64,000 nucleotides of DNA from Lepidodermella squamata (GCA_047495785.1 JBLDXI010000003.1:3162001-3226000), one strand, 5' to 3'; counted from the stretch's first letter, positions 1-28,836 are shown. The notes: generated by a model from the letters alone, not told the origin. A program made the numbers and translations.

Positions 1-1167
1 TGATCTGCCGACCAATGAGCACAGGTAAGGTTCTCTACCAAATTTCTAGGGTCTAAAATATATTAAGGGCTAGTGTAGAAGATGGAAATGTTGCCGAAAG
101 GGGGATATAGGTAAGGGTCTCCCCTTATATCGCTCAAGTTTCCGCAGGGGCCAGGGAAAAAATCATAAGGGTCCCCCCTGTGGTTAGGCTTCGAGCCCGA
201 GGGCTCGAAGCAGGGACAATCCCCCCCCGTCCCCCCACCATCTTCGGCACTGTTAAGGGCGCCCTAAATTATATCAAAAAATTATATAAAAGGATCAATG
301 TCGAGTTCCTAGACAGTTGATATCGGAAAAATCCCTGATTTTTTCGTAAAATCGATACTTGTAATCGATATCGGCCCTGCTGGCTGACACTCATATCGAT
401 AAGAACGCGAAACATCGAGATCTATCGGTTGGGAATGATAAAAAATGACATTTTAGTAAAGACATGAAACGTTTACGTTGGGGAAATTTAGAGCTGGAAC
501 CCTAATTTTGGGGTGGGCACACCCGCATTTCAACCTTCTTTTTCTACAATTCAGAGTTCCAAATCATTGGCTTTGGGGTTTCTATTTATCATTTAAATCT
601 CACTGCTTCGATTATTCGAAATCTCATTGATAGATCTTTTTGCCATCCTTCATAGGCTGCGATGCTAGCTCCGAGAGTGCAATGCCGTTGGATAAAAGCT
701 TCCCTACCAGGCTAGCATGTCAAAAGGCTATAAAATCGTTCTTCATCGTCAACATGACTGAATCTATCTTGAACTTCGACGAAGCTAACCGGCTTTGCAT
801 TCAATCATTCGGCCAGCTCGCCACGATAAAAACAGCGCAGGAACAAAACACATTGAGGGGAATGATTTCAAACTACGGCTATCCCATTCAAGGCGGCTGG
901 GTTGGGCTTAAACTGGTTGCAAATCTCCAGAAATACGGCTGGGTTGACGGGACATTTTTCGGCGACATCACGGATCGCCAATGGGGTGGAACTGATGCGG
1001 CTGACGAACCGACCAACCTTAAACCGTGTGGCGTCTACAGATTCTACCCGCCATTCAAAACATTCCCACAGGGCTACTACCTCGACGACGTAGATTGCGC
1101 CCTGCCGGGGCCGAATATCGCATTCTGCGAGACTTTTAACGCGGGTTTTAAGAATAATGAGCACTGA
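1..1167 (+). CDS. 3' end of a multi-C-type-lectin gene, tandem paralogue of 2604-14486 (exon fragment 1-24 and last exon 656-1167)
   Basis: 1-24 reads ICRPMST then G|gtaagg, matching SCRPMSA G|gtacag at 13545. The last exon starts after catag| at 656 and encodes a CTLD (CIQSFGQLATIK, GWVGL, WVDGT, EPT, C..C) closely similar to 13966-14486. The 3'UTR is also shared. Confidence 0.88.
318..430. repeat. Dispersed intronic repeat rich in ATCGAT/GATATCGG; related copies near 21668-21725 and 22886-22985
   Basis: The string tatcggaaaaatc(c/a)ctg.ttttt..aaaatcgatact.g.aatcgatatcgg recurs at about 320 and about 22890, and inverted at about 21670. Confidence 0.6.
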
Positions 1168-1700: not shown

Positions 1701-2543
1701 ATTTCTTCGGTTAAATCGCAGATATTCTCAGATCGCAGATATTGAATATTCTCTCGGTAGGTTTAATTAAAAAAATTAATTGAATTTTCTACAAAAATTT
1801 CCAAATTAAAAAATAGTTGCGCAACCACGTCTGGGACACGCTATATTCTAAAGACTCTTATGCCATCGACAATATCAATATTAGGTAATGGGGCAATTTA
1901 TTGCTATTTGAAATATTTTTTGATGATTAATGGCGATGATTAACATATTTTCGTTGAATCACCAAAATCGAGTGACAAGTAAGGTTGGGGCCCTTAAGCT
2001 TCACTTCTCCACCACCAATTTTGACTCGTCAACCGCCTTATCGCGCGGATTTGCTTCGAAATCGGCCGTCATTAGCAATCAGGGCCATTTTTGTAACAAA
2101 ACACATCAAACTGCGTCGAATTTGCATCATCTGGATACGATAGACAGCGATTTAAATGAATGGCTCGGTTGATACGGCTCAGTGTCATTCAAAATTGCAT
2201 GTTCTATATTATTTTTCGTCTCGACGTTGCAATAGAATTTTGAAAAACGGACATGGGCGTTTTTCTTGGTTGTGGTTATAGTTCATTAGGTGGAAAATGA
2301 ATCTCGGTGGCCTGGCTCACGTCTAAAATTAGTGTAAATCCTGGCGTCTTTTCTACGCCCTGTTGTTTTGATTTTTTGTTCAATTTAAATCGTAAGCATT
2401 CTATCAGAAAAAACATATAGCGTGTGCCATTTTTCGATTGTAACATGACAAATCGGGCTGCTCGGTGTGAAACACGCGCCTCATCAAATGTTTTTCCACG
2501 TATTTTTCGTATCTATTGACATATTGAGATTACAAATTTCAGC

Positions 2544-2570
2544 TATAAATGAATTACGTCTGAATTCAGT
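2544..2570 (+). promoter_or_regulatory. Candidate core promoter (TATAAA plus TCAGT initiator) of the pseudo-astacin gene
   Basis: TATAAA at 2544-2549, TCAGT at 2566-2570, ATG at 2604. The spacing is slightly shorter than canonical. Confidence 0.4.
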
Positions 2571-2603
2571 AGCAATCGCGGTCCCAAATAACGTATAAAC
2601 TAG

Positions 2604-5600
2604 ATGCATTTACGCGTATTGTTCGTTATTTTATGGTTAACGAACTCTGCCGGGGTTCAGGCCATCCCTGCGGCTGCGCAACTGTGGCCAGACGTGGTGA
2701 ATTACATTGTCGATGTCGAAAAGCTTGGTAAGTTATTAGTTCCAATTTATCTCACGGTCTTACTTTCAGCGAAACCAATTTTGATACAATTTTTTTGACC
2801 CGGAATTGCGTTTTCACGCCTTCTGAAAAATCCTTTAAAACTTTGCGTGGTTTTTATTACAAGGCCTGGCAATCACATACAGTGAGGTACACTGAACAAA
2901 TCACATACGGTACAGTGAGGTTATTTCTGAATTTGACGCCGAGCTTGCCAAGTCTCGTGAACTCGAGATTTTCGGCCTGAAAAAGGATCATTGCAAGGTG
3001 TTCACGAGACTTGACAAGCTCGGTGTCAAAAAATGCGATCGTTGGCAAGACGTCAATTTTTTCACGGAAGAGAATTGATCGGTTAGTAGCTAGTAGCTCA
3101 GAAATTTCTAAGATCGAAATGTCTCAAGAACAGGTGAACAAATTGTCAATTCACGTTTCGCCCAGGTGAGATCGAATTTTCAGCTGTCAAACTGGACGGT
3201 TTGGGAGGAGTACCCTAATTCGACGCGCTGAATCCGAATCTGCAATTAAAACAGGGGGTCGACAGTTTTCGTAGGGCCGATTCACCGGTCGATTTCAGAA
3301 ATAATCAGTCTGGAGCGTAATTTTAATTTCACGAAATTATTCGAAAATGACATTTTTCGACACTTCACTTTTTGTGCCAAGTTTTGAAATTTGGTTCCGC
3401 AATACAAGACATTTTTGTTTGTTTTAAATTAATTGAAATTATATTATTTATCAAGGTGCGACTGTCTATGATAATATCAAGGCGGCTATCAACTTGTGGC
3501 AGGAAAATACCTGCATTACCTTCACAGACTTGGCTGTGCCGTTATCGAGCTTCGACCGTTCAACTCCTAACGTCATGATATTCGCGCCGGGTGTGCCGGG
3601 GTAAAAAATATTTTTTTTATCAAGAAATGGAATATGATATTTTTTATCTTCAGCTGTTTTACCAAAGTCGGTATGACCGATCCGCCATTTTACATCGTCA
3701 TGGGTCCGAGTTGCTACTATCAGGTATGATTAGTTGTTGCGAGCAGACATTTTAAATTTTTGAAAATATTTCAAGATTCCCGAGATTGCTGCTTTGATTG
3801 GACGAGCTCTTGGCTTGGTAAACATTTTAATCCAATAATTTCTTATTTTATTGATCCATTTTATTTCGCAGAACTATGAACACGTTAGAGCAGATCGTGA
3901 CCAGTACATCACAGTTAACCCAAGTGCCATAGTAGTGTAAGGTTTTTTCGACAAATCTAAACAATTTCGATTACCGGCTTTGTATTTTCAGACAGTCTCG
4001 ACCGTTATTTGACATTGACCCGACTGATAATAACTACGGCACGCCTTATGACTACGAATCGATAACTCATCCGATTTATAATTGGCAAAGCATCGATCGC
4101 ATGACTCCAACAATGAATACTAATGATATCAGACTTCTCTATAACTTGGGACAACGGCAGTTTGTCTCCTTTTTAGACTACAAGAAAATCAATCTTCATT
4201 ACAAGTGTAAAGGTATGATTTATTAAGCATCATTATACGACTACTATTTTAGGTGAGAAACCGTGTGTTCTCCGATTGGTTCATGCAAATGTGACGCAGG
4301 CGATTCAAACGAGCATTGCTCTTAAAAATCGATTGTTTTTGCCACAATCACACGCGATTTTGAGTGAATTTTCACATCGCGTGAATCGCCAGCTTCTCAT
4401 TAGTGACCGAACCAATCTCGAAATTCGCGCTGAATCCCGCCTAAAAAGTTTTCACATGAAATTCCTTACCTTAATCAGGAGTAACTTGAAGGTTTAGGAA
4501 TTACAAACCATATGTGAGGAAAGTGACTTTTTCTTCATTTTCCCACCTGATTTTGGACTGGTAGCGGAACAATGCCATTTTTTATGAAAGAGAATTGAGG
4601 AGGAGCAGGATGGGTTGTTTTTCGGGCCTAGAAAATCAGGGAAATAATATATAAATTGGAAATTTTCAGGACAAGTGGGTGCCGATGCCCAATGACAATG
4701 ATAAATTTGATTTTTCGCCTTGGTTTTATTGAAAAAGGTTGAAGGAAACCTCATATAGTACAGTTTTATTGAAACGAGCAGAAAGTATCTTCGTTTTTAA
4801 TTTTCAAGATTCGTTTGCCTGGCGACAGTTAAAGGCAGTATTATAGCTTGGGTTAAAAATTTCAAAACAGTCGGAATTCGGGTTGACCATCAGGATTAGG
4901 GAGCTTTTAAGTAACATTTCGAGAGACACAACTTTTAGCAAAAATTGGCTGAAAATCAGGAAATTTCTAAATGCTTTGTTTTGTGCTACCGATGGAAAGC
5001 TGGCCTTCCAGGCAACCAGGTGATTTAACTCTTTAGCCTTATTTCTATATGAGCGCAAGAAAACCAAAAAGGCGGATAGTAAAATTTCCAAAGTTAGCCA
5101 GCGCTACGGTAACCGAAATTTCCCCGCGTTAAGGTTTATATTTAATAAATTCAAGGGATTTAATTCAATTTAAAACGGTGGATGTATTTTCAGAGAAGAA
5201 GTGTGCTGACACCGACAGAGAATGTGTAAACAACGGCTATCAGGACCCGAAGGTGTGCAATACATGCAAATGCCCGTTTGGATTTACGGGATCTTTCTGT
5301 GAGAATTTACTCACCAGTAATTTACCTTGCGGTGGCGAGATTAAGATGACACCTTGTTCCACGTTTACCTTCACTTTGCCAACATCTCAATATAATCCTG
5401 GCTCTTGTTATTGGAACATCTCTACGGTAACAGTATTTAGCCTTTGACAAGTCGATATTCAGCAGATTTTATTCTTCGCAGACTGGCAACGGCCTGGTAC
5501 TCGCGCTTGAGGACAGGCCGGAACTAGCGGGCTACAACTCGAGTAAGATATTTGGTTTTCATAGATTTTCAAGCCAATTATTCTGTTGCCACAGATCTGT

Positions 5601-8600
5601 GCTGGAGCTTTCTCGAGATGCGAACCGATGATTTTTCGGTGCCAACGAACAAGTTAGTTTTCTCACATTTAATGCCATGAAAAATTTAACTAATTTAAAA
5701 CTAATTTTACTGATTTTACTAATGTTTACTAATCTAGAATGTGCGAGAAGACTGTTACTGCTGGGCGCATGTTTGAAACGAATAACCAGATTGCTGTTTT
5801 GGGATTCCGCCTTGACCCCACAGCCACCGATACGTCCATCAAGCGGATGGCCGGTTTTACATTCGTCCTTTACTCACCCTGTGGCGGTCCATGGGCGACT
5901 GGACTAACTCGTGAATGTCGAATAACCAGCTCGGGCTACGACTACGAAGGCAGCGCTACTACGACCGCCTCTGGGAAAGCGTGCATTTCTTGGACGCTGA
6001 TCCCTGGGCTACAGGCCATAAATTTTCCAAAAATGGACATTCTAGCATCGGCTAAGACTTGTAGAAACCCTATAAATCGCCCGAATATGTACTGCCAAAC
6101 TGATGTACCTACCAACACATCGCCGGGTTGGGAGAATTGCCAGCAGGTGCCTACATGCGGTACGTTGAATTTTACATCGTTTGAAATCGATCACGTAATA
6201 TATGTTTCAAAAATAGAGCCATGGACGAGATGCATCAGCAAAGCATCGCTGGCACTTATCGGATGTCGACAAGTCAATCGACCAGGCTGTCTTCCAACCG
6301 AAACTGAAGTGAGTCGGAAAGTGAAATGACCTTTAACCAGTGAAGAGTGGGATTTGGCGAAATGTTTGACAAGGGGAGGTTGAGATTCCGTTTTTAAGAG
6401 CAATGAAAGAGGAGTCGAATGATATCCAAACGAGGCTGTTAGCCGTAAATGCTGCTGAGACAAAAGACTGAGATAATAGGCGGAAAATTTAAATTTTAGA
6501 AAAGTTTTATACATACCTTTTTTTAGTATTATTCATTTCTATTACCACACGCTCATTCAATTTTTTGGTTCTATGCAAACGAAAATAGGGCAACAAAAAT
6601 AGAGCAAGGGCTTTAGAGCAAAACGACAAATGAGCAACTTTTATATTTAATTTTATCGCGAAAATTACGCAACGAAAAAAAGAGCAAAATGAAATTGGAG
6701 CAAAACGAAAAAAGAGCAAATTTTATTTTTACAATAAATAAGAGCTGAAATTAATTATTAAATTTGCTCTTCTGTCATAATTTGCGAAATTGGCGAAAAA
6801 GAGCAAAATGACAGAAGAGCAAATTTAATAATTAATTTCAGCTCTTATTTATTGTAAAAATAAAATTTTCTCTTTTTTCGTTTTGCTCTAATTTCATTTT
6901 GCTCTTTTCACATTTTGCTCTTTTTCTCTAATTTCGCTAATTTCGCTCTAATTTCGCTGCTCTAATGTTACAGTCATAATAATTAATTAAACTTGCTCTT
7001 TTGTCGTTTTGCTCTAATTTCGTTTAACTCTTATATCGTTGCTCTTAAGTCATTGCTTTATTTTCGTTGCTCAATTAGCATGGCACCAATTGTTTTACTG
7101 ATTGGTTTTATTCGATTTTTTTTAATTCTGAATATTCTGAAATGAGATATCTTACTAAATATTCAACAATTTGGATAGATTTATTCGGCAATATTATTAT
7201 TGGGGTTAATGTCTTTCAAGGTGGATAACATAGAGTTCTAACGCTTGGAAATTTAAAAACTGGTTCAGGGCGTAATGAAAGACAGTAATTGATAAGTCGA
7301 TTTCCTGGAAAATTCGCCAATCTCTACTTTTCACCTGTTATAACGGTCAGCTGTAATACAATTCATAATGGCTTATTTCCCGATATAGTTGACCCCTCTC
7401 GATACCAAAGCCAAACTACGCTATTACCTGAGATCAGCCGACTGCTTGGCAGGCGTTAGTAACTTCGTTGACCATTTTTTCTGATTTTTCTAAATTCCAG
7501 CTATATTCAGAGCGCACGTTGCTGCTTCGACCAAGGTAACAATAAATATTGGGCCCAGTCTGCCGAATACAGTTGCGGCGATGGCAATCTCGATGTTTGT
7601 TTCATACTTGTCACTTCCATTAAGCCAAATTAATATTATTTTCTCAGGTCGGAATTTTCAATTTGTACGGCTCTTTCGAGTCGAATTATAGAGATGCTCT
7701 AAAAGTCTGCAAACCAAATGTTAGTTCGCCACTTATTTTTCGATCACGTTCTAGCAATTTTCCCCAATTTTTCAGGTCCCTGTAAAACGCTGTATTGGTT
7801 ACGACTTGTACAATCCGACTTGCGTTCCGACTACTTCGCCGTGCCCTCCTCAATCCGTAATAAATTTTCGAAAATTGATCAACAACAAATTTTATGATTT
7901 GTTTTTTCCAATTTTTTTTATTAGGGCGTTGAAAGCACTTTTAGCAAGATTGACGGATGCACATTGGGAGTAAGTGATGACGAAGCGCTGAAATATATTG
8001 TAATATTGTTTCAAGGAGGAAGTGCGGTACTGCGCGATGAAATCGGGAGGATTCCGGTGCATTACAGACCCATGCGATCCAGAGCAGGAAACTGAAGTCT
8101 GTGGATTGTTTTACAATATGATAGCCGAATTGTGCATAATGCTACTATATTTTTAGATAGAGATCTTCACAGGTTCTCCGTACTTCGCATTCAATTACGA
8201 GCGTTGCCTCAATTACGTAAGGGTCTAAATATTTGATTCACTGAAATTGAGGATCCAGCATTAAATTTAAGCTTTCTGGCGGTCATTTCCCCAACGCAAA
8301 ATTACGGATTCGTGAAAAATATCAATAACAAAAAGTGTCAGGCTCGCTAATTGAAATTGACGCAGGTGAAACTATACGAAATAATGAGACAGGCGGGGCA
8401 TAATCGTAGAAAAAACTCGAGATTCTAAGGAAGATAACAAACTCGAAAAACTTTGGAAAATCTAGCGCGGGAGCATCAAATTTAGTGCTGGAAGCTAGAG
8501 CCCCAAAGTCGTTTATATTTATTACGTTAATTAATTCTTAATTATAATTCTTAATTTTTAAAAACCTTACTATTGTCTGGACGATTTTAAATTAGGTTGG

Positions 8601-11600
8601 CTATGTCCGCTGTATTTCGTGAGGAAGCACTAGTTGTCGGCTGGCTGAAAGAGGTCTAAATTTCTTGGAAATATCCCGATTTCCAGCTTAAATTTTTGCA
8701 AATTTAGGGTGTATCAACTTTTTTGAAAAACAGATGCCTCCATTTAGGACTTTCCTGACGAATGCAGACTGCGTAAACGCCCCGAAGCAATTCTTTGGAA
8801 TTTCATTCTCGAAGCCGATCGGTACTTGGGAAGAAGCCGCTGTATTATGCGAAGCCGCCAATGGCCAGCTGGCTACTGTCAAGAATGTATACGAGGGAAA
8901 CTGGCTCCGCGACGTCATATATGGGAAAGGCTTTGATTCAGGCTGGGTTGGATTGAAAGCTGGCGATGACATGGTTTTCAGCAAGTGGGTCGATTCATCG
9001 CCATTCGAGCCGTACGACACCCAGTGGCTGCCTGGGTTTCCATCGTTGCAGCCCGGCTTTCAGTGTGCCTACTATTTCGCCACGGACGGTACTATCGTCA
9101 TGAATAACACTCGTTGCAACGATGCGAAAATTAAAAATGCGTTTTGTGAGACTTACGGTAACTTGCAAGCGATTCCCAGCAGTGATGGAGAGCATATACG
9201 CTGTCTTAAATCAACCGATGGTTCTGTTCGTTGCGTTCCGAAAACACAAGGCTTGTTTCCTTTTTTACAGTAACGTAGGGTAACTTAACGGGTGGAACCA
9301 GGTTCTTAAGGGTTAAAATTCAGAAAATTTTGAAAATTTTGAACAAAGGTGTGGAAGATTATTTTTTATAGATCTGCTAATTTTGGCGATTTTTCAAATT
9401 CGTGGTCAGACTTTTCAGCAGTGTCATTTCAGCAAATGAGGGTCAAATCAGCAGTGACTTTTTCATCAATGACACCTTGTCAGTAGAAAACTCGGCAGAC
9501 CGTCATAATAGCAAATAGGTACCCAAAACAGCAAACGCGACAAAACAGCACATTTTTCATTTTCGACATAACAGCATCTGTAACATGGTAAGTTTTCGCT
9601 GTTTTGTCGCATTCGCTGTTCTGCAAGTTGCTGTTTTGTCGCCGTACCATTGAGGCAAAATAGTCATAATAGCAAAGTAAAATAGACACCCGTAACCCAA
9701 TACTTAGGAAAATTTAGCCTTAGCAAATACCCAAAACAGCAAACGCGGCATAACAGCAAATTTCTAACTTACGACATAACAGCAGAAACACGATGCATCT
9801 TTTACTTTTAAGTTTTCGCTGTTATGTCGCAAAATAAAAAATTTGCTGTTTTGTCGCATTCGCTGTTCTGCGCAGTTGCTGTTTTGTCGCCGTACCGAAA
9901 ATTCATAATAATCAACTTTTAGTTATTAAAGCCCAGAATGTTTTCGGAAAATATTTTCATTTTTCTTTCCCTATTGACACGTGATTTTCCGTAAGAGAAA
10001 AATTCGGGGATTAAGAATCTGAAAACCGCATATTTTTATCGTCTACCGTTATTGAGATATTCCAGTGTCAATTTGTCACGTGACCTTACCTTTTGTCACA
10101 CCTTGACGATTATCTCAAGAACGGTGATAGATAGGAAGCCGCTCTCAAAGAAAAAGTTCATCAGCGTGATGAGATCTATCTAGAAATGCATTCAGCTGGG
10201 TCATAGGGGATACTTCGCGCAAAATATCTCAATTTCGATTCCAATCTTAAATTTTTTAAATCAAAAATATGTAAACTTGACTTTTCTAAACACTGCACTC
10301 TCGACAACTAAATTTAAATACATTTTCTACCTAATTTCTCTATGATTTTGATATATCATATTGACTACTACACGGTTCAGAGTTAGTGGCCTGCGGGTCC
10401 TTCTGTATCCTCGAATCTTTTTTACTGCTTAATTCCCCTGATGAATTTATTTTTCGAAATAAAATAATAATAATAATAATAAATCGATTTTGAGGACACT
10501 TTAGTGCAGTTTGGTGACAGTCCCAAAAAACGGCTCCTAGCTCATCACCAAGCCTACGAGACACTGGTCATTTATCCGTTTTCCCCGAATTTATACGATT
10601 TCCCAGCGCGGAGATATGCCTTTTAGACACCCTGGGGTTGTAGTCACCCTACAGGATTTTTTAAAAATAGGGTAGCAGGAAAAGATGCCGTTGGGCTTTA
10701 ATGGCATATTTAATTTAAATAATCCCTGAAGACACAAGTGAGCAGTGAAATTTCAGCAGCGACAAATGAGCAAGTGACACTACGTCAATTTTTATTTAAA
10801 TTCTTTATTATTGTTAAAATTGTATTAAAAATTTTAGCAATAATAATTATGGCGACAACATGTTTTCTGTTTTATATTTCGCCTTTTCATAACCAATTAC
10901 TTATAGTCTCCAAGGTTACCTTGCCTACGATTGCCCAACAAAATTAGTTGAAACGTTTGATAATTTCCAGACTGTGCTATTGGCGAAATTCAGATGCCGA
11001 AAAAGTCTTTCCTGAAGAAATCAGACTGCGAAAATGCCGTGAAACGGTTCTACGGATTGAACGATGATATATGGGCCATCGACACCTTCGACGCAGGTAT
11101 ATAGCATACATATTATTATCAAAGCGAATGAGTTGTAATTATGACGAAATTCAAGCTAAAGCCCGATGCGAGTCTGCGGGCGGCCAGTTGGCGACAATAA
11201 AAAGCGCCGCAGAACTGGAACTGGTACGTGGCGTTATTAGTACCAATGCGTTACTCGGTTACGATTACACATCGGGCTGGATCGGCTTTAATAATGGCCG
11301 CTGGATTGACGGCACAGCCTTCACGCTTTTCGACGGTCTTATCGGGCGTGATGTGAACCGTATGTTTGCTCTTGCAGTTTAGCAATTGAAATTTTAATTT
11401 TGATTTTCTTGAAGATGACGGGAGTGTAACTAAGCCATGTGCTGCAATGACGTTTTTCGAGTCTTACTATGCGTTCCCTGGTGACTTTTACATGACCGAT
11501 ATATCGTGCACACCGGCGCCTAGTGTTTATTATGCAGCAATATGCGAGACATTTGATGCCCCTATAAATGTGAGGAATATTTTCATATTGCAAAATTTTA

Positions 11601-14486
11601 CTTGGGAATATTATTTTAGGTCACGGGTTATGTGAGGTGCGTCAACTCTCCGAATTCGTTTTTCAGTGGAGCGCGATGCGCAACTGCTGATTTGGGTAAG
11701 CTAATTAGTTTTGAATCGACGTGAATAAGTTTCTATACATACAAAACTGGATTTTAGGATGTTCGGATCCGGGCGAGAATCAAATGCCGGTTGGGGTGAC
11801 TTACGATACTATGGATGACTGCTATATGGCAGAGAAAACTTACTACGATGTTACTCCATCAGTAAACTCTGTAACATCTCTCGAGGCCGCGTCGATGCTT
11901 TGTTATGCGACCAACGGCGAACCTGCAACTTTCGAGGATGGCGGCGAGCTGTTACATCTTCGTAACTATATAGTAGCGAAAAATGTGAGCCGATTAACCG
12001 GATGGGTTGGCCTTATAAGACCGAACGGCACTTACGCTTGGATGGACGATACTGATTTCAACACCGATTTCGATTTTTGGGGTCCCTCGGAGCCCAGCGG
12101 TATTAATATTTCTATTATTTTTATTGCTATTTTGATCTTGAGGAATCTAAAATTCAGCGTGGTCAGACTATTCAGCAGTGACACTTCAGCAGTGACTTTT
12201 CACCAGTGACACCTTGTCAGTGAAAATCCATAAAAATCAAAATTTGGAAAAATTTAGGATAAATTATCAAAAATCACTGCTGACTTGTCACTGATGATTT
12301 GTCACTGCGCAAATGTCGCTGCTCAAATGTCACTGCTCATTTGACCCTCATTTGCTGAAATGTCACTGCTGAAAAGTCGCACAACCAAGATCATCAAGGG
12401 CGCAATTTTTCCAATTTGACCCTTCAACACATTCAAAATAATTTGAATTAATTTAGTAATTTATTTATCTGTTTTATTATTTTTTAATTTTTTAATTATT
12501 TTTAATCTTAATTTTTTCCTCAAGTTTTAGGTTGGACTTTGTAAATATTGGCCAGTGACACAAATATAGATTTTTATGTCTTTTATGTTTTTTTAGGTGG
12601 TCCGACTGATTTTTGTGGCTACATGCAGTATTACGACCCACCGGCGGGCGATTATTTTTTGAATGACGCGCCTTGCATGAATCCTGGCGTCTGTCGCTTA
12701 GCTCTTTGCCAAACTTTCCCGCCACCGTTCAAATCATCAGGCTCTGCCAGCAGTAACAGCAATGCTTACGGGTGGTTTCGTTGCGTGGACAAAAATACGG
12801 GATCTATCAAGTGCATGTCGGCATCTCAAGTGCAAGGTAAAAATACTCGGCAATATTCGCCACTAATGACAACTTTTGTTTCATAGCTTCTGAATGCGAC
12901 GATCCGTTGTTTAATGCCCAGGCGTTTTTGACAATCGAACACTGCAAAAATGCGGATAAGACTTTCTCCGTAGTCCGAGCGACTGAAATCGCTGCTCAAA
13001 TGAACGCTGACGTTGAGGCGATTTGTCGCTACGGCGGCGGCGAATTGGCGTCAGTCAAGTCTGCTCTCGAACTGGTACGCCTGCAGATAGCTACGAAAGA
13101 CATCAAGCTAGGCGAAGGCTTCTGGGCTGCTGGTACCAAGCGGGCTGATGGCCTTCTATACTGGCCGGATGGTACTAAAATAACCGGAGTAGAGGGACTC
13201 TGGGCGATGTTGGCGAACGGCCAACAAGAACCCAATGGTTGATTTTTTTTGCTATGAAAAATTGTTAATCTCTACTGGTCTAATTAAGGTGGATTGGGCG
13301 AGTCTTGTACTACATTTTCGAGATACCCGACCGTCCCGCCCTACCTCAGCGACATCCATTTAGGAGACGTTTCTTGTTCCTCATTGCAAAAGGGAGCAAT
13401 CTGCTCTAATTTCGTATATAAGAGGGTATGAAATAACTGGTTTGATTATAATCTAAGGAGAAACTTGTTTCTATAATGCAGAGTGGATGGATTCGGTGCC
13501 GAAATATACCTCGTCAGAGTTATAGCTGCCGACCGATGAGCGCAGGTACAGTTCTCTTGCGAATTTCAGCCATCTCAGGGTTCTAACGCTAAATTTCCCA
13601 AAGTATTGGGTTACGGGTGTCTATTTTATTTTGCTATTTTGTCGGTTTTGCCTCAATGGTACGGCGACAAAACAGCAACTTCGCAGAACAGCTAATGCGA
13701 CAAAACAGCAAATTTTTTATTTTGCGACAAAACAGCGAAAACTTACTATGTAATGCATCAAGTTTCTGCTGTTATGTCGAAATTTGAAAAATGTGCTGTT
13801 TTGTCGCGTTTGCTGTTTTGGGTACCTATTTGCTATTATGACGGTCTGCCGAATCGATTCATTGCTTCAATTATCGCGAAATATTCGAAATCGCAAATTG
13901 TCGAAACTTTTTAGCTGGAACCTGGAAAACAAGTTGAAGCTTTGACTTTTTTATCATTCATATAGGCTGTGATGACTCTGAGAGCCCAATGCCGTTGGAT
14001 AGAAGCTTTTCTACCAGGCTGGCGTGTCTAAACGCTATAAAAAATTTCTTTGTCGTCAACTCGACTGAACCTATCTTGAACTCAGACGAAGCTAACAGGC
14101 TTTGCTATCAATCATCCGGCCAGCTCGCCACGATTAAATCAGGGCAGGAACAAACCGCTTTGAGGTATCTGATTTCAGCCTACGGCGATTCCTTCCAAGG
14201 AGGCTGGGTTGGCCTTAAATTTGACGCAGTTCGCGGCAAATATGGCTGGATCGACGGAACGTTATTCGGCAGACCGGCTTTTGGCACTGATCGCCAGTGG
14301 GGTGGAACTGACACGGCCGACGAACCGTCCGACCAGAAACCGTGTGGCGTCTACCGATTCTACCCGCCATTCAAAACATTCCCACAGGGCTTCTACCTGG
14401 ACGACGTAGATTGCACCCTGCCGTGGCCGTTTTTCGCATTTTGCGAGACTTTCAACCAAGGTTTCAACCAAGGATTCGGGCATTAA
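2604..14486 (+). CDS. Secreted astacin-like pseudo-protease: EGF, CUB, kringle, 4-Cys repeats and 5 C-type lectin domains (about 30 exons; one in-frame TGA at 8620-8622)
   Basis: Phase-compatible exons at about 2604-2727, 3456-3600, 3654-3723, 3776-3817, 3871-3935, 3992-4212 (astacin: WPDVVNY, WQENTCITF, CFTKVG, EHVRADRDQYI, YDYESITH, GQRQFVSFLDYKKINLHYKC); 5194-5426 (EGF [26 protein letters not shown], start of CUB); 5482-5542, 5595-5652, 5738-6159 (kringle: YEGSATTTASGKACISW..CRNP..YC..WENC); small Cys exons 6217-8653; CTLD exons 8708-9250, 10971-11568, 11758-12836, 12888-13425, 13966-14486. Confidence 0.88.
6575..7087. repeat. Foldback/MITE-like element built of GAGCAAA/TTTGCTC units, with a long near-perfect internal hairpin
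   Basis: Arms at about 6678-6778 and 6808-6908 are reverse complements (aaagagcaaattttatttttacaataaataagagctgaaattaattattaaatttgctcttctgtcat). Flanking units point in opposite directions. Confidence 0.75.
9493..9897. mobile_element. Non-autonomous repeat made of AACAGC/GCTGTT units (about 1.7 tandem copies); inverted copy at 13588-13851; related fragment near 52016-52095
   Basis: cggcagaccgtcataatagcaaataggtacccaaaacagcaaacgcgacaaaacagc...gtcgccgtaccattgaggc matches the reverse complement of 13588-13851. Confidence 0.8.
12158..12388. mobile_element. MITE-like element of CAGCAGTGAC units in inverted arms; partial copies near 9401-9484 and 10737-10780
   Basis: cgtggtcagact.ttcagcagtg occurs at 9401 and 12158. 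The right arm carries gtcactgctg repeats ending cactgctgaaaagtcgcacaacca. Confidence 0.65.
13588..13851. mobile_element. Inverted copy of the 9493-9720 repeat, in the last intron
   Basis: Reverse-complement identity by eye over about 230-260 bp. Confidence 0.8.
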
Positions 14487-20352: not shown

Positions 20353-23300
20353 CTAAGCGCAGAGAAAATCAAGAAAATTGCTATCAACAGCGAAATTATC
20401 GACTCGCAACTGCTGCGACGATTGGAAGAACCGGAAATACGAACTGCTCGTGGCAATTTGCTGCTTTAGCGTCGCCTGGTACTCAGACGACGTCACGCCA
20501 TTGCCGACACCGACGACGAAAATGCGCGTCCAAATCGACCGCAAAGCCGCCAACTCATCGCGCGTCTCCAACACCGACGACTCGCGCCGGTTCGACGTTA
20601 GAAACACAACCCGCCACGGGTTAACGTTCGGCATCGCGTTGAACACATGCCGCCGCGTCGCTTGAAACATACGCGCCAAATCGTCGTTTAACGTGTATTT
20701 AAATGAATCGTAATTAACCGACAGCCAATTTTGCCACTTTGCGACCGAGTCGTTACGTTTGAATGGGTTATTTGAAATATTAACCGCCGTCCAAATAAAT
20801 CGCCGATCCATAGCCACGCCGGTTAGGGTGACTAGACCGATAGATAGCCCGATATCGCCCGTTGAGTTTGATGCGTTTCGTACAATCGATTGCCAATTTT
20901 GCGCGAAATTTACGAGAAAATTCTCGGCGTTATCCGCGTCGGATTTTGTGAAATTTTCAGATTCCGATAAATCTGACACGAAAATCACGTTTATCGACCC
21001 TGAACAGGCGCGGCCGTTCGGTAGCGAGCACTGCGGCATCGCAGTCCAAGCCGCCTGGTCGTTGCACGTCACGCCTGGGTGACCTCGAATAACGTAGCCT
21101 TTTTCGCATTTGTACCAAATCGAGTCGCCAATAACACTCGCCGTATTCAATGGCACGGTGGTATAGGCGACGAGGCCGTTTGTAACCGGTGGTACCAGGC
21201 CGCAGGAAATTGAAAATGTTGACCTAGGTACGCAGCGCGGTTGGGTTGACCACGAGCCGTTAGTGAGGCATTCAATGCGAGTAGGGCCTTTTAGGAGGTA
21301 ACTTGAGTTGCAGGAATACGCGGCGTAACTGCCAATTACACTGTCATTGCCGTCGAAACTCTTCTCGGCTACTACACCATCGGACAACGCAGGGACACCT
21401 CCACACGTTTTCCCTGTAAAAAATTGAAGTAATAAAAGAATTTTATCATGTTTTTATGTTATAAAAATTAAAAATTAAAAAAAATTAAGGAGGAATTTTC
21501 GAAATCAGTTTAGCGAAAATTTCAATTTTCATATTTTTGAAAATTTTTGAAAATTTAGGGTTCCACCACTAAATTAGAGGGTTCAGCCCTAAATTTCGCC
21601 AAAATATGGCTTTTCGAGTTCGAAGTCTTCTTTATAGCTTCTCAAATTTGTGCTATCGCCCCTAATTAGCCGATATAGATATTCAGTATCGATTTTAAAA
21701 ATCAGTGATTTTTTATATCGATACTGCAGCCTTTCAATTTTGTTGAAGTTACTACTCGAACCCGATGGGAAAGGTCATTATTGATCAAGAATGGGAATAG
21801 TCGAAATTGCAAAAAAATCGGAACCTAAATTTCAGTGGTCAAAATCAAGATCCTTTTCAAAATTAGCCTAATTTAAATTTCAGAGACTATAGGGGCATTT
21901 ATTCGAGCGGAATACAAAAATCGCGGAATTTCGATAAATTGAAAAGAGTTTAAAATCGAAAAATTACGGTTTTGAAGTGAAATGCAGATAGGTTGATCAC
22001 TCCAACGGCCGTCTTGTTGGCAAACCACCGAATTCAATTGAGTCGCAAATCCAAACCCATCAGCACATTGGTAAGTCACATTAGTCCCAGGCTTGCTAGG
22101 GCCTCGAAAAGCCTCTGTGAAAACTCCGTTTTGAATAGCTGGCGGCGCCCCGCAACTATCGCCAATGCTGAAACGGCAATAAGGCGCCGGGGTCCAGTCG
22201 CCAGTAGCCTGGCACCGAACTGCTGTGCTACCGGCAGGTTGAAACGCTGAGCCGCATTCGTACCAAACAATGTCATTTACAACACTTGCATTGCCTTTGA
22301 ATGTTTTCATGGTGATATTAGCGTTGCTGACGACGGGCGGTTCGCCGCATCCGCCGTCTTTTTTGATGCAACTCGGCAGGTCGCTCCAGGTGCCGGTGAC
22401 CAGGCACATGACCTGGTCGCTGTCGCTCGTAATTACGTAACCAGTGTGGCAGCGGATTCGGACGTAATCTCCGGGCACGGGATTCGCGTCCAATGGGTAG
22501 GATTGCGAATAAATCACCGAATTCCCAATCGAAGGGGGAGTACTGCATTTTCCGGAGTCTAAAAAGAAAATTGAAACGAATAACAGAAATTTCAAGAAAA
22601 ATTTGAAAAATTGAAATCAAATTTTAATATTAAAAAATGCCCATAAACCAAAAATTTTACGGTCATTTTTAGGACTACAAATTTAATTTCAAGGGTTTAA
22701 AATTTAGGTTCCAGCAATAAATTAGAGCGTCTGGTTATATTATTTCTATTTTTTTCGGCATTTTCTCCACGAAACTCACTGAAGCTCTCTATAATCCTAC
22801 TATTTGTTAATTGAGCTACCTGGTACCGATAGAAAGAAATAGTAGATACCGATACCGATAGATACCGATAGTAGAAATTTTTTCACTATATCGGAAAAAT
22901 CACTGCTTTTTAAAATCGATACTGGAAATCGATATCGGCTACGTGAACTCTTATACTGATATAGATCAATCGGTTATTTCCGATAATCAAAATTTTTGGA
23001 AAATGAGAAAAACTGAAAAGCCATATTTAGAGAAAATCCAGCGTTAGAGCTTCAAATTTAGGACTGGAACCCTCAATTTAGGTGTGCACTTTGCAAGCCC
23101 ATTTTTCTATAATTTTAATTACATTGTTCGCATTTAGGCGGATTCGTCCATAAACCGCTATCAAGGCATGAAATGGTCGCATTGCCCTTGATGGTGAAAC
23201 CAGCCGTGCACGAATAGATGACGTAGTTGCCAACAGTCGGCTGAGGTCCAACGAAATTGTTGTAGATAACCCGTGAATTCGGCACAAGGGGCGGAGCATC

Positions 23301-26300
23301 GCAGTAGACGGGCTTTTTCAGGCAAACAGGCAGAACGGACCAACTGCCATCGGCGGAGCATTCCGTGAAATACGCGGTTGATTGCATTTCATAACCGGGT
23401 AGACAAGCGTAGTAAACTTTATTGCCAGGGTAGGCGAAATTTCCTTCGAATGATCTCTGAGTTATACGGCCATTTTCAATCGCAGGCGCAATGCCACAAG
23501 TCGATACTGGAAAAATTCAGAAAAATTAAAGAAATTTAAAAAATTAAAATTTTAACAATTTTTGAAAAATTCAAGTTAGAATATTTTTAAATTAAAATTT
23601 TTTTTAAATAAAAAAATTCTTACCCGGAACGCATTCTGGGCTTTCGGTCCATTTTCCATCCATAGCGCATTGAACATAGTTATTGATGCGAGATCCGCAT
23701 GATTTTACGTTGAATTTATATCCATTCACGCATTCGTAGATAACGATAGAACCAACTGGGGGCAAATCAGCGTCGAGAATTTCGTAACTCGTGAAAACAA
23801 TAGCCGCGTTTGCAACAAACGGCGCAGGTCCGCAAGACGTCAAAGAATGCGCGGCAGTAGCTTGAAAAATTTAAAATTGAGAAACAATTAAATAAAAAAA
23901 TAGGAAAAATTACAATTGTCAATGCAAGCGGGTAACGGGCTCCAAGTGCCATCTTTTTGACAGGTAATGGACGATTTTTGACCGTTAGCCATCACATAAT
24001 AATTCGAACAACGGTAGATAGCTCGATTTCCTGGCCGGGCTCTATCTGAACCCGAAAGTTCAAAATCAGCAGAAACGAGCACGCCATTGTAAATTCTCGG
24101 TGGCTGAGGGCAAGACTTCAAATCTTAAATTCGAAAAAAATTAAAAATATCTTTTTAAATTTCGAAAATTCTCACCTTCATTTCTGATGCAATCAGGAAT
24201 AACAGTCCATTTTTTATTGACGCATTTGACCTCGGTATCGCCGTCAATACTGTAACCAGCCTCACAGGCGAAAATCATGCGACTGCCCTCGACGGATACG
24301 TTGGCGAACGATTTTTCAACAATAAAACCATGGTCGATAGTCGGCGCCTTCCCGCAGGCCCCAGACCCGATTGGGGCGCAACTCGGCGGGTCGGACCAAG
24401 ACCCGTCAAACGTGCAAATAATGCGGCGAAGGCCGACGGTTTGATAGCCAGAATCGCAAGCAAATTCAGCCCAATCGCCGACTTGAGCGATCGAATTACT
24501 TCTTTTCACGATTTGCCCGTTCAAAATTGTTGGCGTAGGGCCGCAGTCAGATTTTCGAACTGTAGTTCGGCGAGATGTTGTAGCAGTTGAGGTCGAAGTC
24601 GTGGCTGTTGTAGTCGTCTGGGGTAAGGTCGCGCCTTCAGCTAGGCAGATCGGTAATGAAGACCATGACCCATCGGCTTGGCAGGTGGTTGAGTTCGAAC
24701 TCGAGACTATTCGATAGCCCTTCAGGCATCGGAAAACCATGACATCCCCCGCTTCGCTAGGCATTGATTTCGAGCTAGTGCTTGCTAATTCGCTGTTAGG
24801 GACCGACGGGACATTATCACAGGTGACCCGGATGCATTGAGGCGTTGAGCTGTCCCATTTTCCGCTCGCTAAACAGGACATTGTGCCATTTGCGTTGAGG
24901 CTTGAGTTGAATTTGAACCCGGAATCGCAGTTGTAGGAAATTTTTAGGGTATCAGTTTCGAAATCGACTATTTCACCATTCGCTACTTGCGGGGCTTTTC
25001 CACATTTCGTTTTATCAGCCTCTGTAACCAAAATTCGATTAGTAAATCGGAGATTAAAATTGAAGGGTCTAACCTTCAGAAATTAGGGTGCATGTTGGGG
25101 GCGAAGTCCAGCCCGAACTCATGCACATGGAGGCTCTTTTGTTGGTTATCGCATTGTTTTCGTTGCTTTCAGCGAAAATGTAGCCCAATGAACATTCGTA
25201 AAAAACCTGCAAAAAATTGGCAAAATTAATAAAATTGCTTTGGAAATTAATCTCTATCAAATCCAATTTGAATCGCAAATTTTGGAGCATTCAATATAAT
25301 TTCTAACTAAAATAATTAAAAAATTGATAGTGACCCTCAACTCATTCCGAATTTTCAGCCATTTTGCGAACTTTTGAGGCCCATTTTATCCTAATATTTT
25401 GCTGCCAATACCCACCTTTAATTTTATAGACCTATACCCTACACCCTTGAGCATGATAACATATGAATTTTGCCCAAATTTGTTTCCCAATCTGTTTCCT
25501 TACTTTCGTCCCATTTTAAAATCGTTTCTAATACCTATTCTATATTATTTTGCTCGAAATTATTTTCTAATCTAAGCTAACCGTAGAACCGATAGTTGTA
25601 GACAGTTCAGTATTATCGTCTTTCACGAGCACACCATTCGGTGTAAGAGGAGGCGGGCCACACGAGAAAGGGGTCGTTGTGGCCGCACCAGTTGTTGAAG
25701 CGGTTTTAGCAGTCGAAGCTTGATCAGATCCACCATTACCCGATTTCCCACCATCACTCTGCGGTCCTTTTGTAATCTCAATATTTCTATTTCCGCCGCC
25801 ACTATTGCTGTTCCCATTATTAGTGTCATCAGATTTTTTCGTGGTTTTCGGAAGCGTCGTAGTAGTAGTAGTAGTGGTCGTTGCAGTTGTAGTAGATGCT
25901 GCTGGAAAAACGTTTAAGTATTAATTTTTGCCTAATTGGTTTTTTTCATCCACTCAACACGTGAAACGTTTCAAAAACATAAACAAGAATGTCAGAAAAC
26001 GATTGGACGGCAATAAGTCACTCTCTCTCTCTCTCTCTTTACCAGAATTCGTCGAACTTCGAGTTTCGAATTTCGAACTACCCGAAGTAGTTTCGCTGGC
26101 AGGGATACTAGTAGACGTGCTAGGGTCTATAAGCACGAAACATTGACAATAAATCAATCACAGATGTCGAGATAAAAAATTAAGGAGGCATTAATATTAA
26201 TGCCGCCGGGTATCGCTTTGATCCCAGTTACCGCGTCCCTAGCAACACGCATTTTCTAGATTCTACCATCGATATGTTTAGCTTTTCGATATTTTGATAA

Positions 26301-28836
26301 GGAATATCCTTAGAATAGACGATAAGACGACAAACCTGTTCGAAGGTTATAGCTAACTGTAGGCTTTGTGCCTTGCTGGTCCCAGCAGACAGGTGGATCC
26401 AGGTTCCACTGGCCGACATCTCCGCAAATTATCCCGCTGTAATTGGTGAGTAACGTAGCGCCATTGTTGCACTGATAACGAACCATCGAGCCAGGCATGC
26501 TGACAACTTCGAACGACTTGAAAGCCACAATCGCATTTTTAACCACAGGAGCCTCACCGCAAGATTCTAAATAATTAATTTCAAAATTTAGATTCAAAGC
26601 GAAAAATCAGTAATGACTCACGTGGACACCCTGGAATTGCAGTCCATGATTCGATCATCGTACAAAGGGCAACAGCAGACCCATTCAGGGCATATCCACT
26701 GAAAAAAAGTTGTTAATTAATTAAATTTAATTAAATTAATTAAAAAAGTAAAATTCATACTTATTGCATGAATATGTGATAGTATCGCCCGGTACGCTTT
26801 TGTTTCCCTCGAATGTTTGCGAATAAATATAGCCATTGACAATTTTCGGTGCCGGGCCGCATGACCTCGATAAAATGTCCCGATTCGGCTGGCAAACCGG
26901 CGGGAAAGTCCACACGCCACCCGCCTGGCAAGCGACCGTATTTTTCCCAGCAATGTCGTAGCCTGTTTTACACGCATACGTCACCGTGTCGCCCTCTTTA
27001 GACATCGCATCGGCCGCGAAGGATCGGTCGATGATTGTTGCTGAGTTGATGACAGGTGCTGGGCCGCAGGATCCGCTGGAAAATGTCACTGTTGTAGCGG
27101 CCTGGGTTGAGGTGACTATTGTCGAGTCGCCTGGGTTACTGGGTGTCAGTGGCTGGGTGACAGCGCCGCCAGCTGGGGTTCCAACGCTCGTAATCACCGG
27201 CTGGGTCGATGTCGTAGTAGTACTAGTCGTAGTACTCGCTAAAATTGATAATTGAAAATTCGATGAAAAAAAATGAAAAATTTAATACTTGATTCTGTTG
27301 TTGTTGTTATTGAGACACATCTCGGAGTGGTGGACCAGTTAAGGGTGAGTAGACAAACAACACGATCCGGGCTGCCATCGGCGAAAGCGTAGCCGTCTTT
27401 ACAGGTGAAAGTTATCATATCACCAGCTCGGCTCATGACTGCGTACGATTTCGAAACAGCAACCGCGTTTTCAACAACAGGATACTGAACTCCGCAAGAT
27501 CCTAGGAATGAACATTCGGATTTAGAATTTCAATCAAATTTTGAAAAATTCAGCCAAATTTTAATGACGGGTCCCACATTGGTTCCGTGTTTTGAAATTT
27601 AGTTCCGCTTCAGTCATTTTGGGTTTACTAAATTCTCCACGTGATATTCTGCCTTAATTTTTGGTTAAAATTTTTATGATTATTTTTTGAAAATTTTGAA
27701 ATAAAATAAAAGGCTTATTATCGTAAATTTTGTTACGGTGAAAAAACGACTTGAAAAAAATATTTTCAAAAAAAATAATGCATCACCTAAAAAAGACCAG
27801 ATAATATTTTGAATTTTTTTTGCGATTTCAGATTTTTTGTAAATAACCCGATAATTAATTAGGTCACTTTCCAGGTTCAATTCGTTTCTATTATTCGAGC
27901 AATATGGTGAATTAAATTCCTCATAATAAGGCATAATTGTGGTAATTACCTAGGCAAAGAGGAAGCGGCGAAAATGTAGCATTCGCTTGGCACGAGACGT
28001 ACATAGACCCAGCCAGGATAAAGCCTTCCTTGCACGCGTACATGATAAAATCACCCGAGAAAAATAACCCATTCGCCGAGGATACAACAACCGTGGCATG
28101 CGGAACTTCTGGCAACGGACCACAACTGATATAAGCCTCACCTAAAATATTTAAAAAAATTAATTAAAAATTTCGAAATATTAATTAACTTACTGTCGGG
28201 TGAAATTTTTGCTAATAGCGCTGGAATTCTTGCAACAGGTTTCGCTACAATTTCAGTGCCACTTCGCAGTTCTTTGATCTGCCTGATATCGGCGAGTCCA
28301 AGGAAACCGATGTATGTTGGGTAATTTTCGGGGTCACGAATATTGCTCCGATAGGGCACGACATTATTCGCCTCGGCAATGTCGTAAAAATCGTAAAATA
28401 GCCCGAAAATATTGCCCTTTTCAGCTCGAAATGGCTTCCCGACTGAAAGCAGCGGCAGTTGGACGGTTTGCCAGGTTTTCGCCGAATTAGACGCATTGAC
28501 ATCGACCCGCATGTAGCTCAACATGCGGAACGAGCCCGGGCGACTAGCAATCGGCTCTAGCACGGCTAAATTGAAGTATTTAGCCGCCGAACTGGCGAAA
28601 TTGTTGATAAAAGTGACGGATTGAATGACGCCTGAGCACGGTGCGGTCATCCATGGGTAGATGTGGAGGAGACTGCTGGTTTCTGGGTAGAAATCCACGC
28701 TCGACTCAGGCGAGGCGACGCCAACTTTACACCCTGCACCGCCGGATCTAGAGACAGCGGCCGGTGTTGGGACGATTTGACTTGAAATTACGGGGATTAA
28801 TTGAAAAATTATCACTGCAGGTAATATAGTCATCAT
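20353..28836 (-). CDS. Secreted protein: N-terminal beta-rich domain, about 19 sushi/CCP repeats with Thr/Ser-rich linkers, C-terminal VWA domain
   Basis: Signal peptide MMTILPAVIIFQLIPVISS. Repeated CGxxPxxxNG..YxC..GY...C...GxWS..PxC across multiple exons. VWA with VIFVSDLSES (DxSxS) and IFVVGVG. No transmembrane segment seen. Confidence 0.88.

What the first reader, a model, noticed from the sequence alone, without database searches (positions are those of the whole stretch)
2604..4212. Astacin domain with all zinc ligands, the catalytic Glu, the Met-turn and the propeptide removed
Seen: HExxHxxGxxHE reads ALIGRALGL|NYE (H>A, E>L, H>R, H>Y). SxMHY reads SITHP. The domain starts right after the signal peptide with no pro-segment. 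The scaffold (four Cys, EHxRxDRD, YDY, GQR, IN..Y.C) is intact. Established: astacins need three His, the Glu and the Met-turn, and are made as zymogens. Inference: this targeted loss with a preserved fold points to a selected pseudo-enzyme (binding, decoy or scaffold role) rather than random decay.
Basis: partly seen in the sequence, partly recalled or inferred. Interest (0 to 1): 0.78.

Follow-up and report, generated by a model that had tools for sequence, protein, structure and literature searches.

The report
Secreted zinc-less astacin pseudo-protease gene
This is an intact animal gene for a secreted protein that keeps the shape-defining parts of an astacin zinc protease but has lost every residue needed to hold zinc or cut, so it probably binds rather than cleaves; I found no description of such dead astacins in the papers I could search.

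Summary
Six GT-AG exons at 2604-4212 (+) splice in frame into a signal peptide followed directly by an astacin (M12A) domain. HExxHxxGxxH reads ALIGRALGLNY and SxMHY reads SITHP. The four Cys, EHxRxDRD, YDY and GQR are kept.

The gene continues through five more exons (EGF, CUB, kringle, Cys-rich tail) to a stop at 6329, giving 517 aa. A frame-compatible splice could instead add a C-type lectin exon at 8734-9273.

The loss is targeted. Of 35 columns conserved in 15 active astacins, 0 of 6 catalytic ones are kept against 27 of 29 others (Fisher p = 1.7e-5). The six dead codons differ from any functional codon by at least 9 bases. Under neutral drift, an open frame with intact splice sites survives in under 1% of trials at 5% divergence. 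No alternative HExxH exon exists in the window.

No close relatives, RNA data or dN/dS could be obtained. Unrelated dead astacins exist in Hydractinia, Hypsibius and Parastrongyloides proteins.

Unchecked scan notes report further pseudo-astacin loci in this genome, including one about 10 kb before the window start. So the scan has noted this kind of gene before on other DNA.

Best reading: a selected, non-catalytic binding module.

The parts
2604..2727 (+). Exon 1: ATG, signal peptide (aa 1-20) and the N-terminus of the astacin domain (QLWPD...); no prosegment
   Evidence: An in-frame TAG lies directly upstream of the ATG. The donor is G|gtaagt. W28 aligns with the conserved Trp of mature astacins.
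3456..3600 (+). Exon 2: upper subdomain of the astacin domain, with conserved Cys61 (ENTCITF)
   Evidence: Pfam Astacin profile positions 22-42, E 0.025; alignment.
3654..3723 (+). Exon 3: strands carrying conserved Cys91 and Cys110
3776..3817 (+). Exon 4: degenerate active-site helix IPEIAALIGRALGL (His1 to A, Glu to L, His2 to R; the Gly of HExxHxxG is kept)
   Evidence: It is 57% identical to the same stretch of the active astacin P0016, so it is the true helix exon.
3872..3936 (+). Exon 5: NYEHVRADRD (His3 to Y; family-specific Glu and RxDRD kept)
   Evidence: Pfam Astacin profile positions 94-112.
3992..4212 (+). Exon 6: lower subdomain with PYDYESITHP (Met-turn M to T, zinc Tyr to P), GQR, and the last Cys (YKCK)
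   Evidence: Pfam Astacin E 2.6e-12, profile positions 129-189; PDB 3vtg and 3lqb alignments.
5194..5426 (+). Exon 7: EGF-like module and the start of the CUB domain (CGGEI...)
   Evidence: Aligns with the EGF-CUB region of active astacins P0020 and P0016; that region of P0020 is Pfam CUB, residues 341-448.
5482..5542 (+). Exon 8: CUB, continued
   Evidence: In-frame GT-AG model; alignment with P0020.
5595..5652 (+). Exon 9: CUB, continued
5738..6159 (+). Exon 10: end of CUB plus a kringle domain
   Evidence: Pfam Kringle E 2.7e-7, 31.2 bits, just under the 34.3-bit cut-off; plasminogen 4a5t E 9.2e-12.
6217..6329 (+). Exon 11: short Cys-rich tail and TGA stop. It holds an internal strong donor after 6308 (GAA|GTGAGT).
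   Evidence: No Pfam match.
8734..9273 (+). Possible extra 3' exon encoding a C-type lectin domain. Its phase-0 acceptor (acag|ATG) fits the phase-0 donor at 6308. Unproven.
   Evidence: Pfam Lectin_C E 7.5e-8. The joined frame stays open and gives 690 aa. It has no signal peptide of its own.

Best explanation
The locus is an intact, selectively maintained gene for a secreted pseudo-astacin. Its order is signal peptide, zinc-less astacin-fold domain, EGF, CUB, kringle and a Cys-rich tail, perhaps followed by a C-type lectin domain. Shown: the domain is a true astacin homologue; its three zinc His, general-base Glu, Met-turn Met and zinc Tyr are all replaced; and there is no prosegment. Inferred: it cannot bind the catalytic zinc or hydrolyse peptides, so it needs no zymogen latency. 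Signal-peptide removal alone would leave a mature-like N-terminus, and the family-specific Glu that normally anchors that terminus is kept. Most likely mechanism: the disulfide-braced astacin scaffold, with its now metal-free cleft, acts as a constitutively open protein- or peptide-binding surface. It would work together with the CUB, kringle and possibly lectin modules as an extracellular recognition, adhesion or scaffold protein. The Arg in place of the second His may fill the empty metal site; this is speculation.
For: The gene model has 11 in-frame exons, all GT-AG, giving 517 aa. Astacin homology is supported. Targeted loss: 0 of 6 catalytic columns kept against 27 of 29 other conserved columns, p = 1.7e-5. 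The six dead codons differ from functional codons by at least 9 bases, and neutral drift at 5% or more would almost always break the frame or a splice site. No alternative HExxH exon exists. EGF-CUB is supported, the kringle, and the lectin exon and its phase compatibility. Other dead astacins are joined to binding or signalling modules: a Hydractinia protein with two SUEL lectin domains and a Hypsibius receptor tyrosine kinase with three dead astacin domains. Among the differences seen in the DNA run X1, 6 of 12 exonic ones are synonymous, where about a quarter is expected by chance.
Against: There is no RNA evidence of expression or of the splice pattern. No paralogue or orthologue sequence could be fetched, so dN/dS is untested. 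The fold was not modelled. The X1 differences are few, mix alleles with paralogues, and are not significant. The binding role rests on analogy, not on any test. The 3' end of the gene (stop at 6329 or lectin exon) is unresolved.
Confidence: 0.7

Rival explanations
1. The protein is a decoy or regulator of active astacins. The dead domain keeps substrate- or inhibitor-binding exosites. It would compete with the genome's active astacins for substrates, or soak up their inhibitors, and so tune proteolysis rather than act as a general recognition molecule.
For: The scaffold and cleft-lining positions other than the catalytic ones are kept. The EGF-CUB modules that guide substrate choice in active astacins are retained and align with those of active relatives. 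Scan notes report active astacin clusters in the same genome (unchecked).
Against: No partner or inhibitor has been identified. The added kringle and possible lectin exon point to other ligands. This reading cannot be separated from the main one with sequence alone.
Confidence: 0.15
2. It is a young or unexpressed pseudogene. A duplicated astacin lost function and is decaying, and the open frame is luck.
For: No RNA run holds the locus. Two long introns carry hairpin-type insertions. Half of the listed exonic differences in X1 change the amino acid.
Against: There are no stops, no frameshifts and 20 of 20 canonical splice sites over 1554 coding bases. The losses are confined to the catalytic set (p = 1.7e-5). 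There are at least 9 base changes in the six dead codons, while the simulated survival of frame and splice sites is 0.8% at 5% divergence.
Confidence: 0.07
3. It is still an enzyme. The domain would use other residues or another metal site for hydrolysis or a different reaction.
For: Some pseudoenzymes have migrated catalytic residues (the abstract of PMC10211241, seen). His131, His175 and Glu130 remain near the former site.
Against: All three His ligands, the Tyr ligand and the general base are gone together. Their replacements (A, L, R, Y, T, P) offer no obvious metal-binding triad. The loss of the prosegment fits a protein that needs no latency.
Confidence: 0.04
4. It is a gene-model artefact. 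The true transcript would use other exons that restore a working active site or a prosegment.
For: The model is by eye, without cDNA. The 3' end is ambiguous.
Against: No HE..H occurs in any + frame of 2000-6500 and no HExxHxxG-like string in any of the six frames of the 64-kb window. Exon 4 is clearly the homologous helix exon. The signal peptide and the mature N-terminus lie in one exon.
Confidence: 0.03

Closest known systems
Active astacins with EGF-CUB C-terminal modules (for example nematode NAS subgroup III-V type; nearest hits P0016 and P0020)
   Same: Same catalytic-domain family (PF01400), same four Cys, same EHxRxDRD, PYDY and GQR motifs, and the same EGF-then-CUB order after the domain. 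C. elegans subgroup III astacins have one EGF and one CUB (PMC2824743).
   Different: All zinc ligands, the general base and the Met-turn Met are replaced. There is no prosegment. A kringle follows the CUB domain. Identity to P0016 is only 30-62% per exon.
ADAM-family pseudopeptidases (ADAM2, 7, 11, 18, 22, 23, 29, 32; C. elegans unc-71), reviewed in PMC11266112
   Same: They are metzincin-clan extracellular proteins with a degenerate HExxHxxGxxH. They act through protein-protein binding instead of catalysis.
   Different: They belong to a different family (M12B, not M12A). According to that review they typically keep the Met-turn and have a prodomain. Here both are gone.
Other zinc-less astacin homologues in public protein sets: Hydractinia symbiolongicarpus XP_057307810.1 (P0027), Hypsibius exemplaris OQV24185.1 (P0007), Parastrongyloides trichosuri A0A0N4Z5H7 (P0002)
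   Same: They are PF01400 domains with the zinc motif and the Met-turn Met-Tyr degenerate while RxDRD, PYDY and the Cys are kept. P0027 even reads SITHP. They are fused to binding or signalling modules: SUEL lectins, a tyrosine kinase, and CUB.
   Different: They are distant (at most 45% identity over exon 6) and carry different replacement residues and different architectures. The tree needs at least two separate losses. The grouping of this gene with the Parastrongyloides domains is flagged as possible long-branch attraction.

Membership tests
Astacin family (MEROPS M12A, Pfam PF01400) | Sequence homology to the astacin catalytic domain over its full length | tested here: met
   Exons 2, 5 and 6 hit PF01400 collinearly on profile positions 22-42, 94-112 and 129-189. 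Exon 6 scores 47.3 bits against a cut-off of 22.5. The spliced domain scores 93 bits against the active astacin P0016 in a local phmmer search.
Astacin family (MEROPS M12A, Pfam PF01400) | Zinc-binding consensus HExxHxxGxxH (three His ligands plus the general-base Glu) | tested here: not met
   It reads ALIGRALGLNY. Only the Gly is kept.
Astacin family (MEROPS M12A, Pfam PF01400) | Family-specific Glu and the RxDRD motif (ExxRxDRD) | tested here: met
   EHVRADRD is present at residues 130-137.
Astacin family (MEROPS M12A, Pfam PF01400) | Met-turn SxMHY with the zinc-binding Tyr | tested here: not met
   It reads SITHP: M is replaced by T and Y by P.
Astacin family (MEROPS M12A, Pfam PF01400) | Two conserved disulfides (four Cys) | tested here: met
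   C61, C91, C110 and C221 fall on the four Cys columns conserved in active astacins. The disulfide bonds themselves are inferred.
Astacin family (MEROPS M12A, Pfam PF01400) | Signal peptide followed by a latency prosegment (aspartate switch) | tested here: not met
   A signal peptide is present by inspection. Only seven residues separate its predicted cleavage site from the conserved Trp of the mature domain, all within exon 1. No signal-peptide predictor was available.
Astacin family (MEROPS M12A, Pfam PF01400) | Zinc content and peptidase activity | not testable with these tools
   This needs recombinant protein. Sequence predicts neither.
Pseudoenzyme (selected inactive enzyme homologue) | Catalytic residues lost while the fold-defining residues are kept | tested here: met
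   0 of 6 catalytic columns kept against 27 of 29 other conserved columns, Fisher p = 1.7e-5.
Pseudoenzyme (selected inactive enzyme homologue) | Purifying selection on the gene (dN/dS below 1, conservation in relatives) | tested here: inconclusive
   The evidence is indirect only: an intact 11-exon frame against simulated neutral drift, and 6 synonymous to 6 non-synonymous differences in X1 contigs. No relatives could be fetched.
Pseudoenzyme (selected inactive enzyme homologue) | Expression as RNA and protein | not testable with these tools
   No RNA run holds the locus; the single listed holder is a DNA-like contig set.

The most novel reading that the evidence does not exclude
This gene is one member of a lineage-specific, expanded family of secreted zinc-less astacins joined to EGF-CUB-kringle modules, sometimes with a C-type lectin. 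Scan notes list several more loci in this genome. The astacin fold would have been re-used as a diversifying extracellular recognition or adhesion domain in a little-studied animal phylum, probably Gastrotricha. A 2023 astacin survey retrieved no astacin sequences from that phylum (PMC9848320).
Probability: 0.35. Interest if true: 0.65.

Novelty: new variant of a known kind. Interest (0 to 1): 0.45.

Why it matters
Pseudo-proteases are well documented for ADAMs and carboxypeptidases. The pseudopeptidase review (PMC11266112) lists no astacin, and the 2023 astacin review (PMC9848320) never uses the word 'inactive'. Here the whole catalytic apparatus and the zymogen prosegment were removed together while the scaffold was kept. 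This gives a clean natural example of an astacin fold re-used without catalysis. The tardigrade, cnidarian and nematode cases found on the way suggest this has happened more than once. If the family in this genome is as large as the scan's notes suggest, it is a testable case of a protease fold turned into a binding-domain family.

Tried and rejected
- **Close relatives.** The exhaustive phmmer search with exon 6 found nothing above 48% identity. Word searches with exon 6, with the exon 10-11 ORF, and with an alignment of the exon pieces to P0016 were blank or returned only P0016. The alignment for that last search was partly misaligned, so its blank is weak. Two metagenome scans were blank.
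- **Expression.** The run search listed no RNA holder.
- **Laying contigs of run X1.** The assembly is fragmented, with mixed alleles and paralogues. Only 40 of 181 differences were printed, so the 6:6 synonymous to non-synonymous count is not a proper test.
- **Paralogues in the window.** tblastn of the model found none.
- **Structure prediction.** I did not run it, because the spliced protein has no reference and long sequences may not be typed.
- **Common origin of dead astacins.** The tree is unresolved, and the grouping with Parastrongyloides is flagged as long-branch attraction.
- **Organism identity.** I did not test it here. 'Gastrotrich, probably Lepidodermella squamata' comes from scan notes. 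The window's G+C of about 41% fits the 43% published for that genome (PMC11660948), but this proves nothing.

Full report
**Observation.** The stretch 2604-4212 on the + strand holds six exons: 2604-2727, 3456-3600, 3654-3723, 3776-3817, 3872-3936 and 3992-4212. Each intron is bounded by GT and AG, and the exons join in frame into 222 codons. The product starts with a typical signal peptide (residues 1-20, ending AGVQA) and then runs straight into an astacin domain.

Pfam Astacin (PF01400) matches the exon translations in collinear order:
- exon 2 on profile positions 22-42;
- exon 5 on positions 94-112;
- exon 6 on positions 129-189, with E 2.6e-12 and 47.3 bits against a cut-off of 22.5.

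Solved hatching enzymes and meprin align over exon 6. The active-site helix and the following exon read AALIGRALGL|NYEHVRADRD, and the Met-turn reads PYDYESITHP.

An in-frame TAG lies directly before the ATG. The signal peptide and the conserved Trp of the mature N-terminus (QLWPD) are seven residues apart in the same exon. A prosegment therefore cannot be hidden in an intron.

**The whole gene.** It ends at a TGA stop, giving 517 residues with no stop or frameshift.
- The part after the astacin domain aligns with the EGF-CUB region of active astacins P0020 and P0016. That region of P0020 is Pfam CUB.
- Exon 10 ends in a kringle: Pfam E 2.7e-7, and plasminogen 4a5t E 9.2e-12.
- Exon 11 is a short Cys-rich tail. 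It contains a strong internal donor (GAA|GTGAGT after 6308, phase 0). This donor fits the phase-0 acceptor of a C-type lectin exon at 8734-9273 (Pfam Lectin_C, E 7.5e-8). The joined frame stays open and gives 690 residues.

Without cDNA I cannot choose between the two 3' ends.

**Is the loss targeted?** I aligned the domain with 15 astacin domains that keep HExxHxxGxxH and with four other dead ones. Thirty-five columns are conserved in at least 80% of the active set. The six known catalytic or metal positions are the three His, the Glu, the Met-turn Met and the Tyr, as defined in PMC9848320. All six are replaced here. Twenty-seven of the other 29 conserved columns are kept, including the four Cys, the Gly of the helix, R-DRD, PYDY-S-H, the Gly of GQR and the C-terminal D...Y..C. 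Fisher's exact test gives p = 1.7e-5.

The six dead codons are GCT, TTG, CGA, TAT, ACT and CCG. They differ from any His, Glu, His, His, Met, Tyr codon set by at least 9 bases out of 18, so the loss is not a few recent hits. In a substitutions-only simulation, the 517-codon frame and the 40 splice-site bases stay intact in 36% of trials at 1% divergence, 0.8% at 5% and none at 10%. Together these results argue for a gene kept by selection after, or while, the active site was dismantled.

**Can splicing restore an enzyme?** No HE..H occurs in any + frame between 2000 and 6500. No H[ED]xxHxxG, SxMHY or second RxDRD occurs in any of the six frames of the 64-kb window. Exon 4 is 57% identical to the helix of P0016 and differs at exactly the two His and the Glu, so it is the homologous exon. 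The third His, the Met and the Tyr sit in exons 5 and 6.

**Relatives.** An exhaustive phmmer search with exon 6 against 1.84 billion cluster representatives found 29 hits, none above 48% identity. Word searches and two metagenome scans found no closer relative. The window holds no paralogue.

The closest full-domain match is an active astacin from an ENA assembly (P0016, 93 bits). Several hits are themselves zinc-less astacins:
- a Hydractinia 'nematocyst expressed protein 6-like' with two SUEL lectin domains, which also reads SITHP;
- a Hypsibius receptor tyrosine kinase, annotated 'Kit', with three dead astacin domains in front of the kinase;
- a Parastrongyloides protein with two dead domains, each followed by an EGF-like stretch, and a C-terminal CUB.

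Their replacement residues differ, and the tree needs at least two separate losses. The grouping of this gene with the Parastrongyloides domains is flagged as possible long-branch attraction.

**Expression and polymorphism.** No RNA run holds the locus; one run of unrecorded type, most likely DNA, does. Its contigs are fragmented and mix near-identical pieces with pieces 85-95% alike. Of the 12 listed differences that fall in exons, 6 are synonymous, where about a quarter would be expected by chance. The sample is small, only partly printed and of mixed origin, so I treat it only as weakly consistent with constraint.

**Context from the scan.** These are unchecked leads.
- Notes place another zinc-less astacin about 10 kb before the window start (s1-431074).
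- Further notes describe pseudo-astacin loci with EGF-CUB-kringle, and in one case C-type lectin, on other pieces of this genome (s1-404918, s1-410323, s1-404931, s1-393967).
- Other agents think the animal is a gastrotrich, probably Lepidodermella squamata.

I could test only one related point. The lectin exons at 640-1167 and 13989-14486 have no signal peptide and carry a phase-1 acceptor that fits the phase-1 donor type of the kringle exon. This agrees with lectin exons being 3' ends of such genes. The 2023 astacin review retrieved no astacins from Gastrotricha and lists kringle and C-type lectin among domains found with astacins.

**Literature.** The pseudopeptidase review lists ADAM, M13, M14 and other cases but no astacin. 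The astacin review does not use the word 'inactive'. The C. elegans family paper does not describe naturally dead members. My searches found no paper on zinc-less astacins. From memory, MEROPS flags non-peptidase homologues in M12A, so their existence in databases is not new. Their description and function appear to be.

**Mechanism.** Shown: homology, loss of all catalytic and metal residues, absence of a prosegment, an intact multi-exon gene, and the EGF-CUB-kringle modules. Inferred: the protein is secreted, does not bind catalytic zinc and does not cut. Its astacin scaffold would serve as an always-open binding surface beside CUB, kringle and perhaps lectin modules, in recognition, adhesion or matrix scaffolding. 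A decoy or regulator role toward active astacins is the main alternative mechanism. A decaying pseudogene, a cryptic enzyme and a mis-modelled gene are each unlikely, for the reasons given under the rivals.

**Verdict.** The gene is a new variant of a known kind: a metzincin pseudo-protease, here in the astacin family, with the Met-turn and prosegment also lost. Interest is moderate. It would rise if the family-wide pattern and expression are confirmed.

Noticed in passing
window 640-1167 and 13989-14486 (+): Two closely similar C-type lectin exons. Neither has a signal peptide. Each is preceded by the same acceptor context (atag|GC TGY GAT...), which is phase 1 and matches the phase-1 donor type of the kringle exon. 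They look like 3' exons of paralogous multi-domain genes. The one at 640 may belong to the pseudo-astacin noted about 10 kb before the window start.
   Followed up: partly
window 6678-6908: A near-perfect palindrome (101-nt arms, 98% complementary, 29 nt apart) built of GAGCAAA-rich units. It lies about 350 nt after the stop at 6329 and looks like a foldback or MITE-like element. It would lie inside the intron if the gene splices on to the lectin exon.
   Followed up: partly
window 2932-3030 (intron 1) and 4288-4401 (intron 6): The two long introns (728 and 981 nt, against 51-84 nt for the other eight) carry hairpin-forming inverted repeats: 31-nt arms at 94% and 25-nt arms at 80%. Contigs of run X1 differ here by skips, which suggests insertion polymorphism.
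   Followed up: partly
P0007 (Hypsibius exemplaris OQV24185.1): This tardigrade protein, annotated as a Kit receptor tyrosine kinase, has three zinc-less astacin domains in front of the kinase. A pseudo-protease ectodomain on a receptor kinase may deserve its own look.
   Followed up: partly
P0027 (Hydractinia symbiolongicarpus XP_057307810.1): This cnidarian 'nematocyst expressed protein 6-like' protein has a degenerate zinc site (HYIMLTLGFMH), the same SITHP string as this gene, and two SUEL lectin domains.
   Followed up: partly
window 2594-2606: The ATG is directly preceded by ...aaactag. This gives both an in-frame stop and an AG that could serve as a trans-splice acceptor, if this animal uses spliced leaders as other scan notes claim.
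   Followed up: no
window 20353-27197 (-) and 31888-34184 (-): Long ORFs that by eye look rich in sushi/CCP repeats with a vWA-like part, and a gene that by eye looks ankyrin-repeat-rich, lie downstream. Together with four lectin-like exons (the one at 11721 gave no Pfam match), the neighbourhood is dominated by extracellular binding modules.
   Followed up: no
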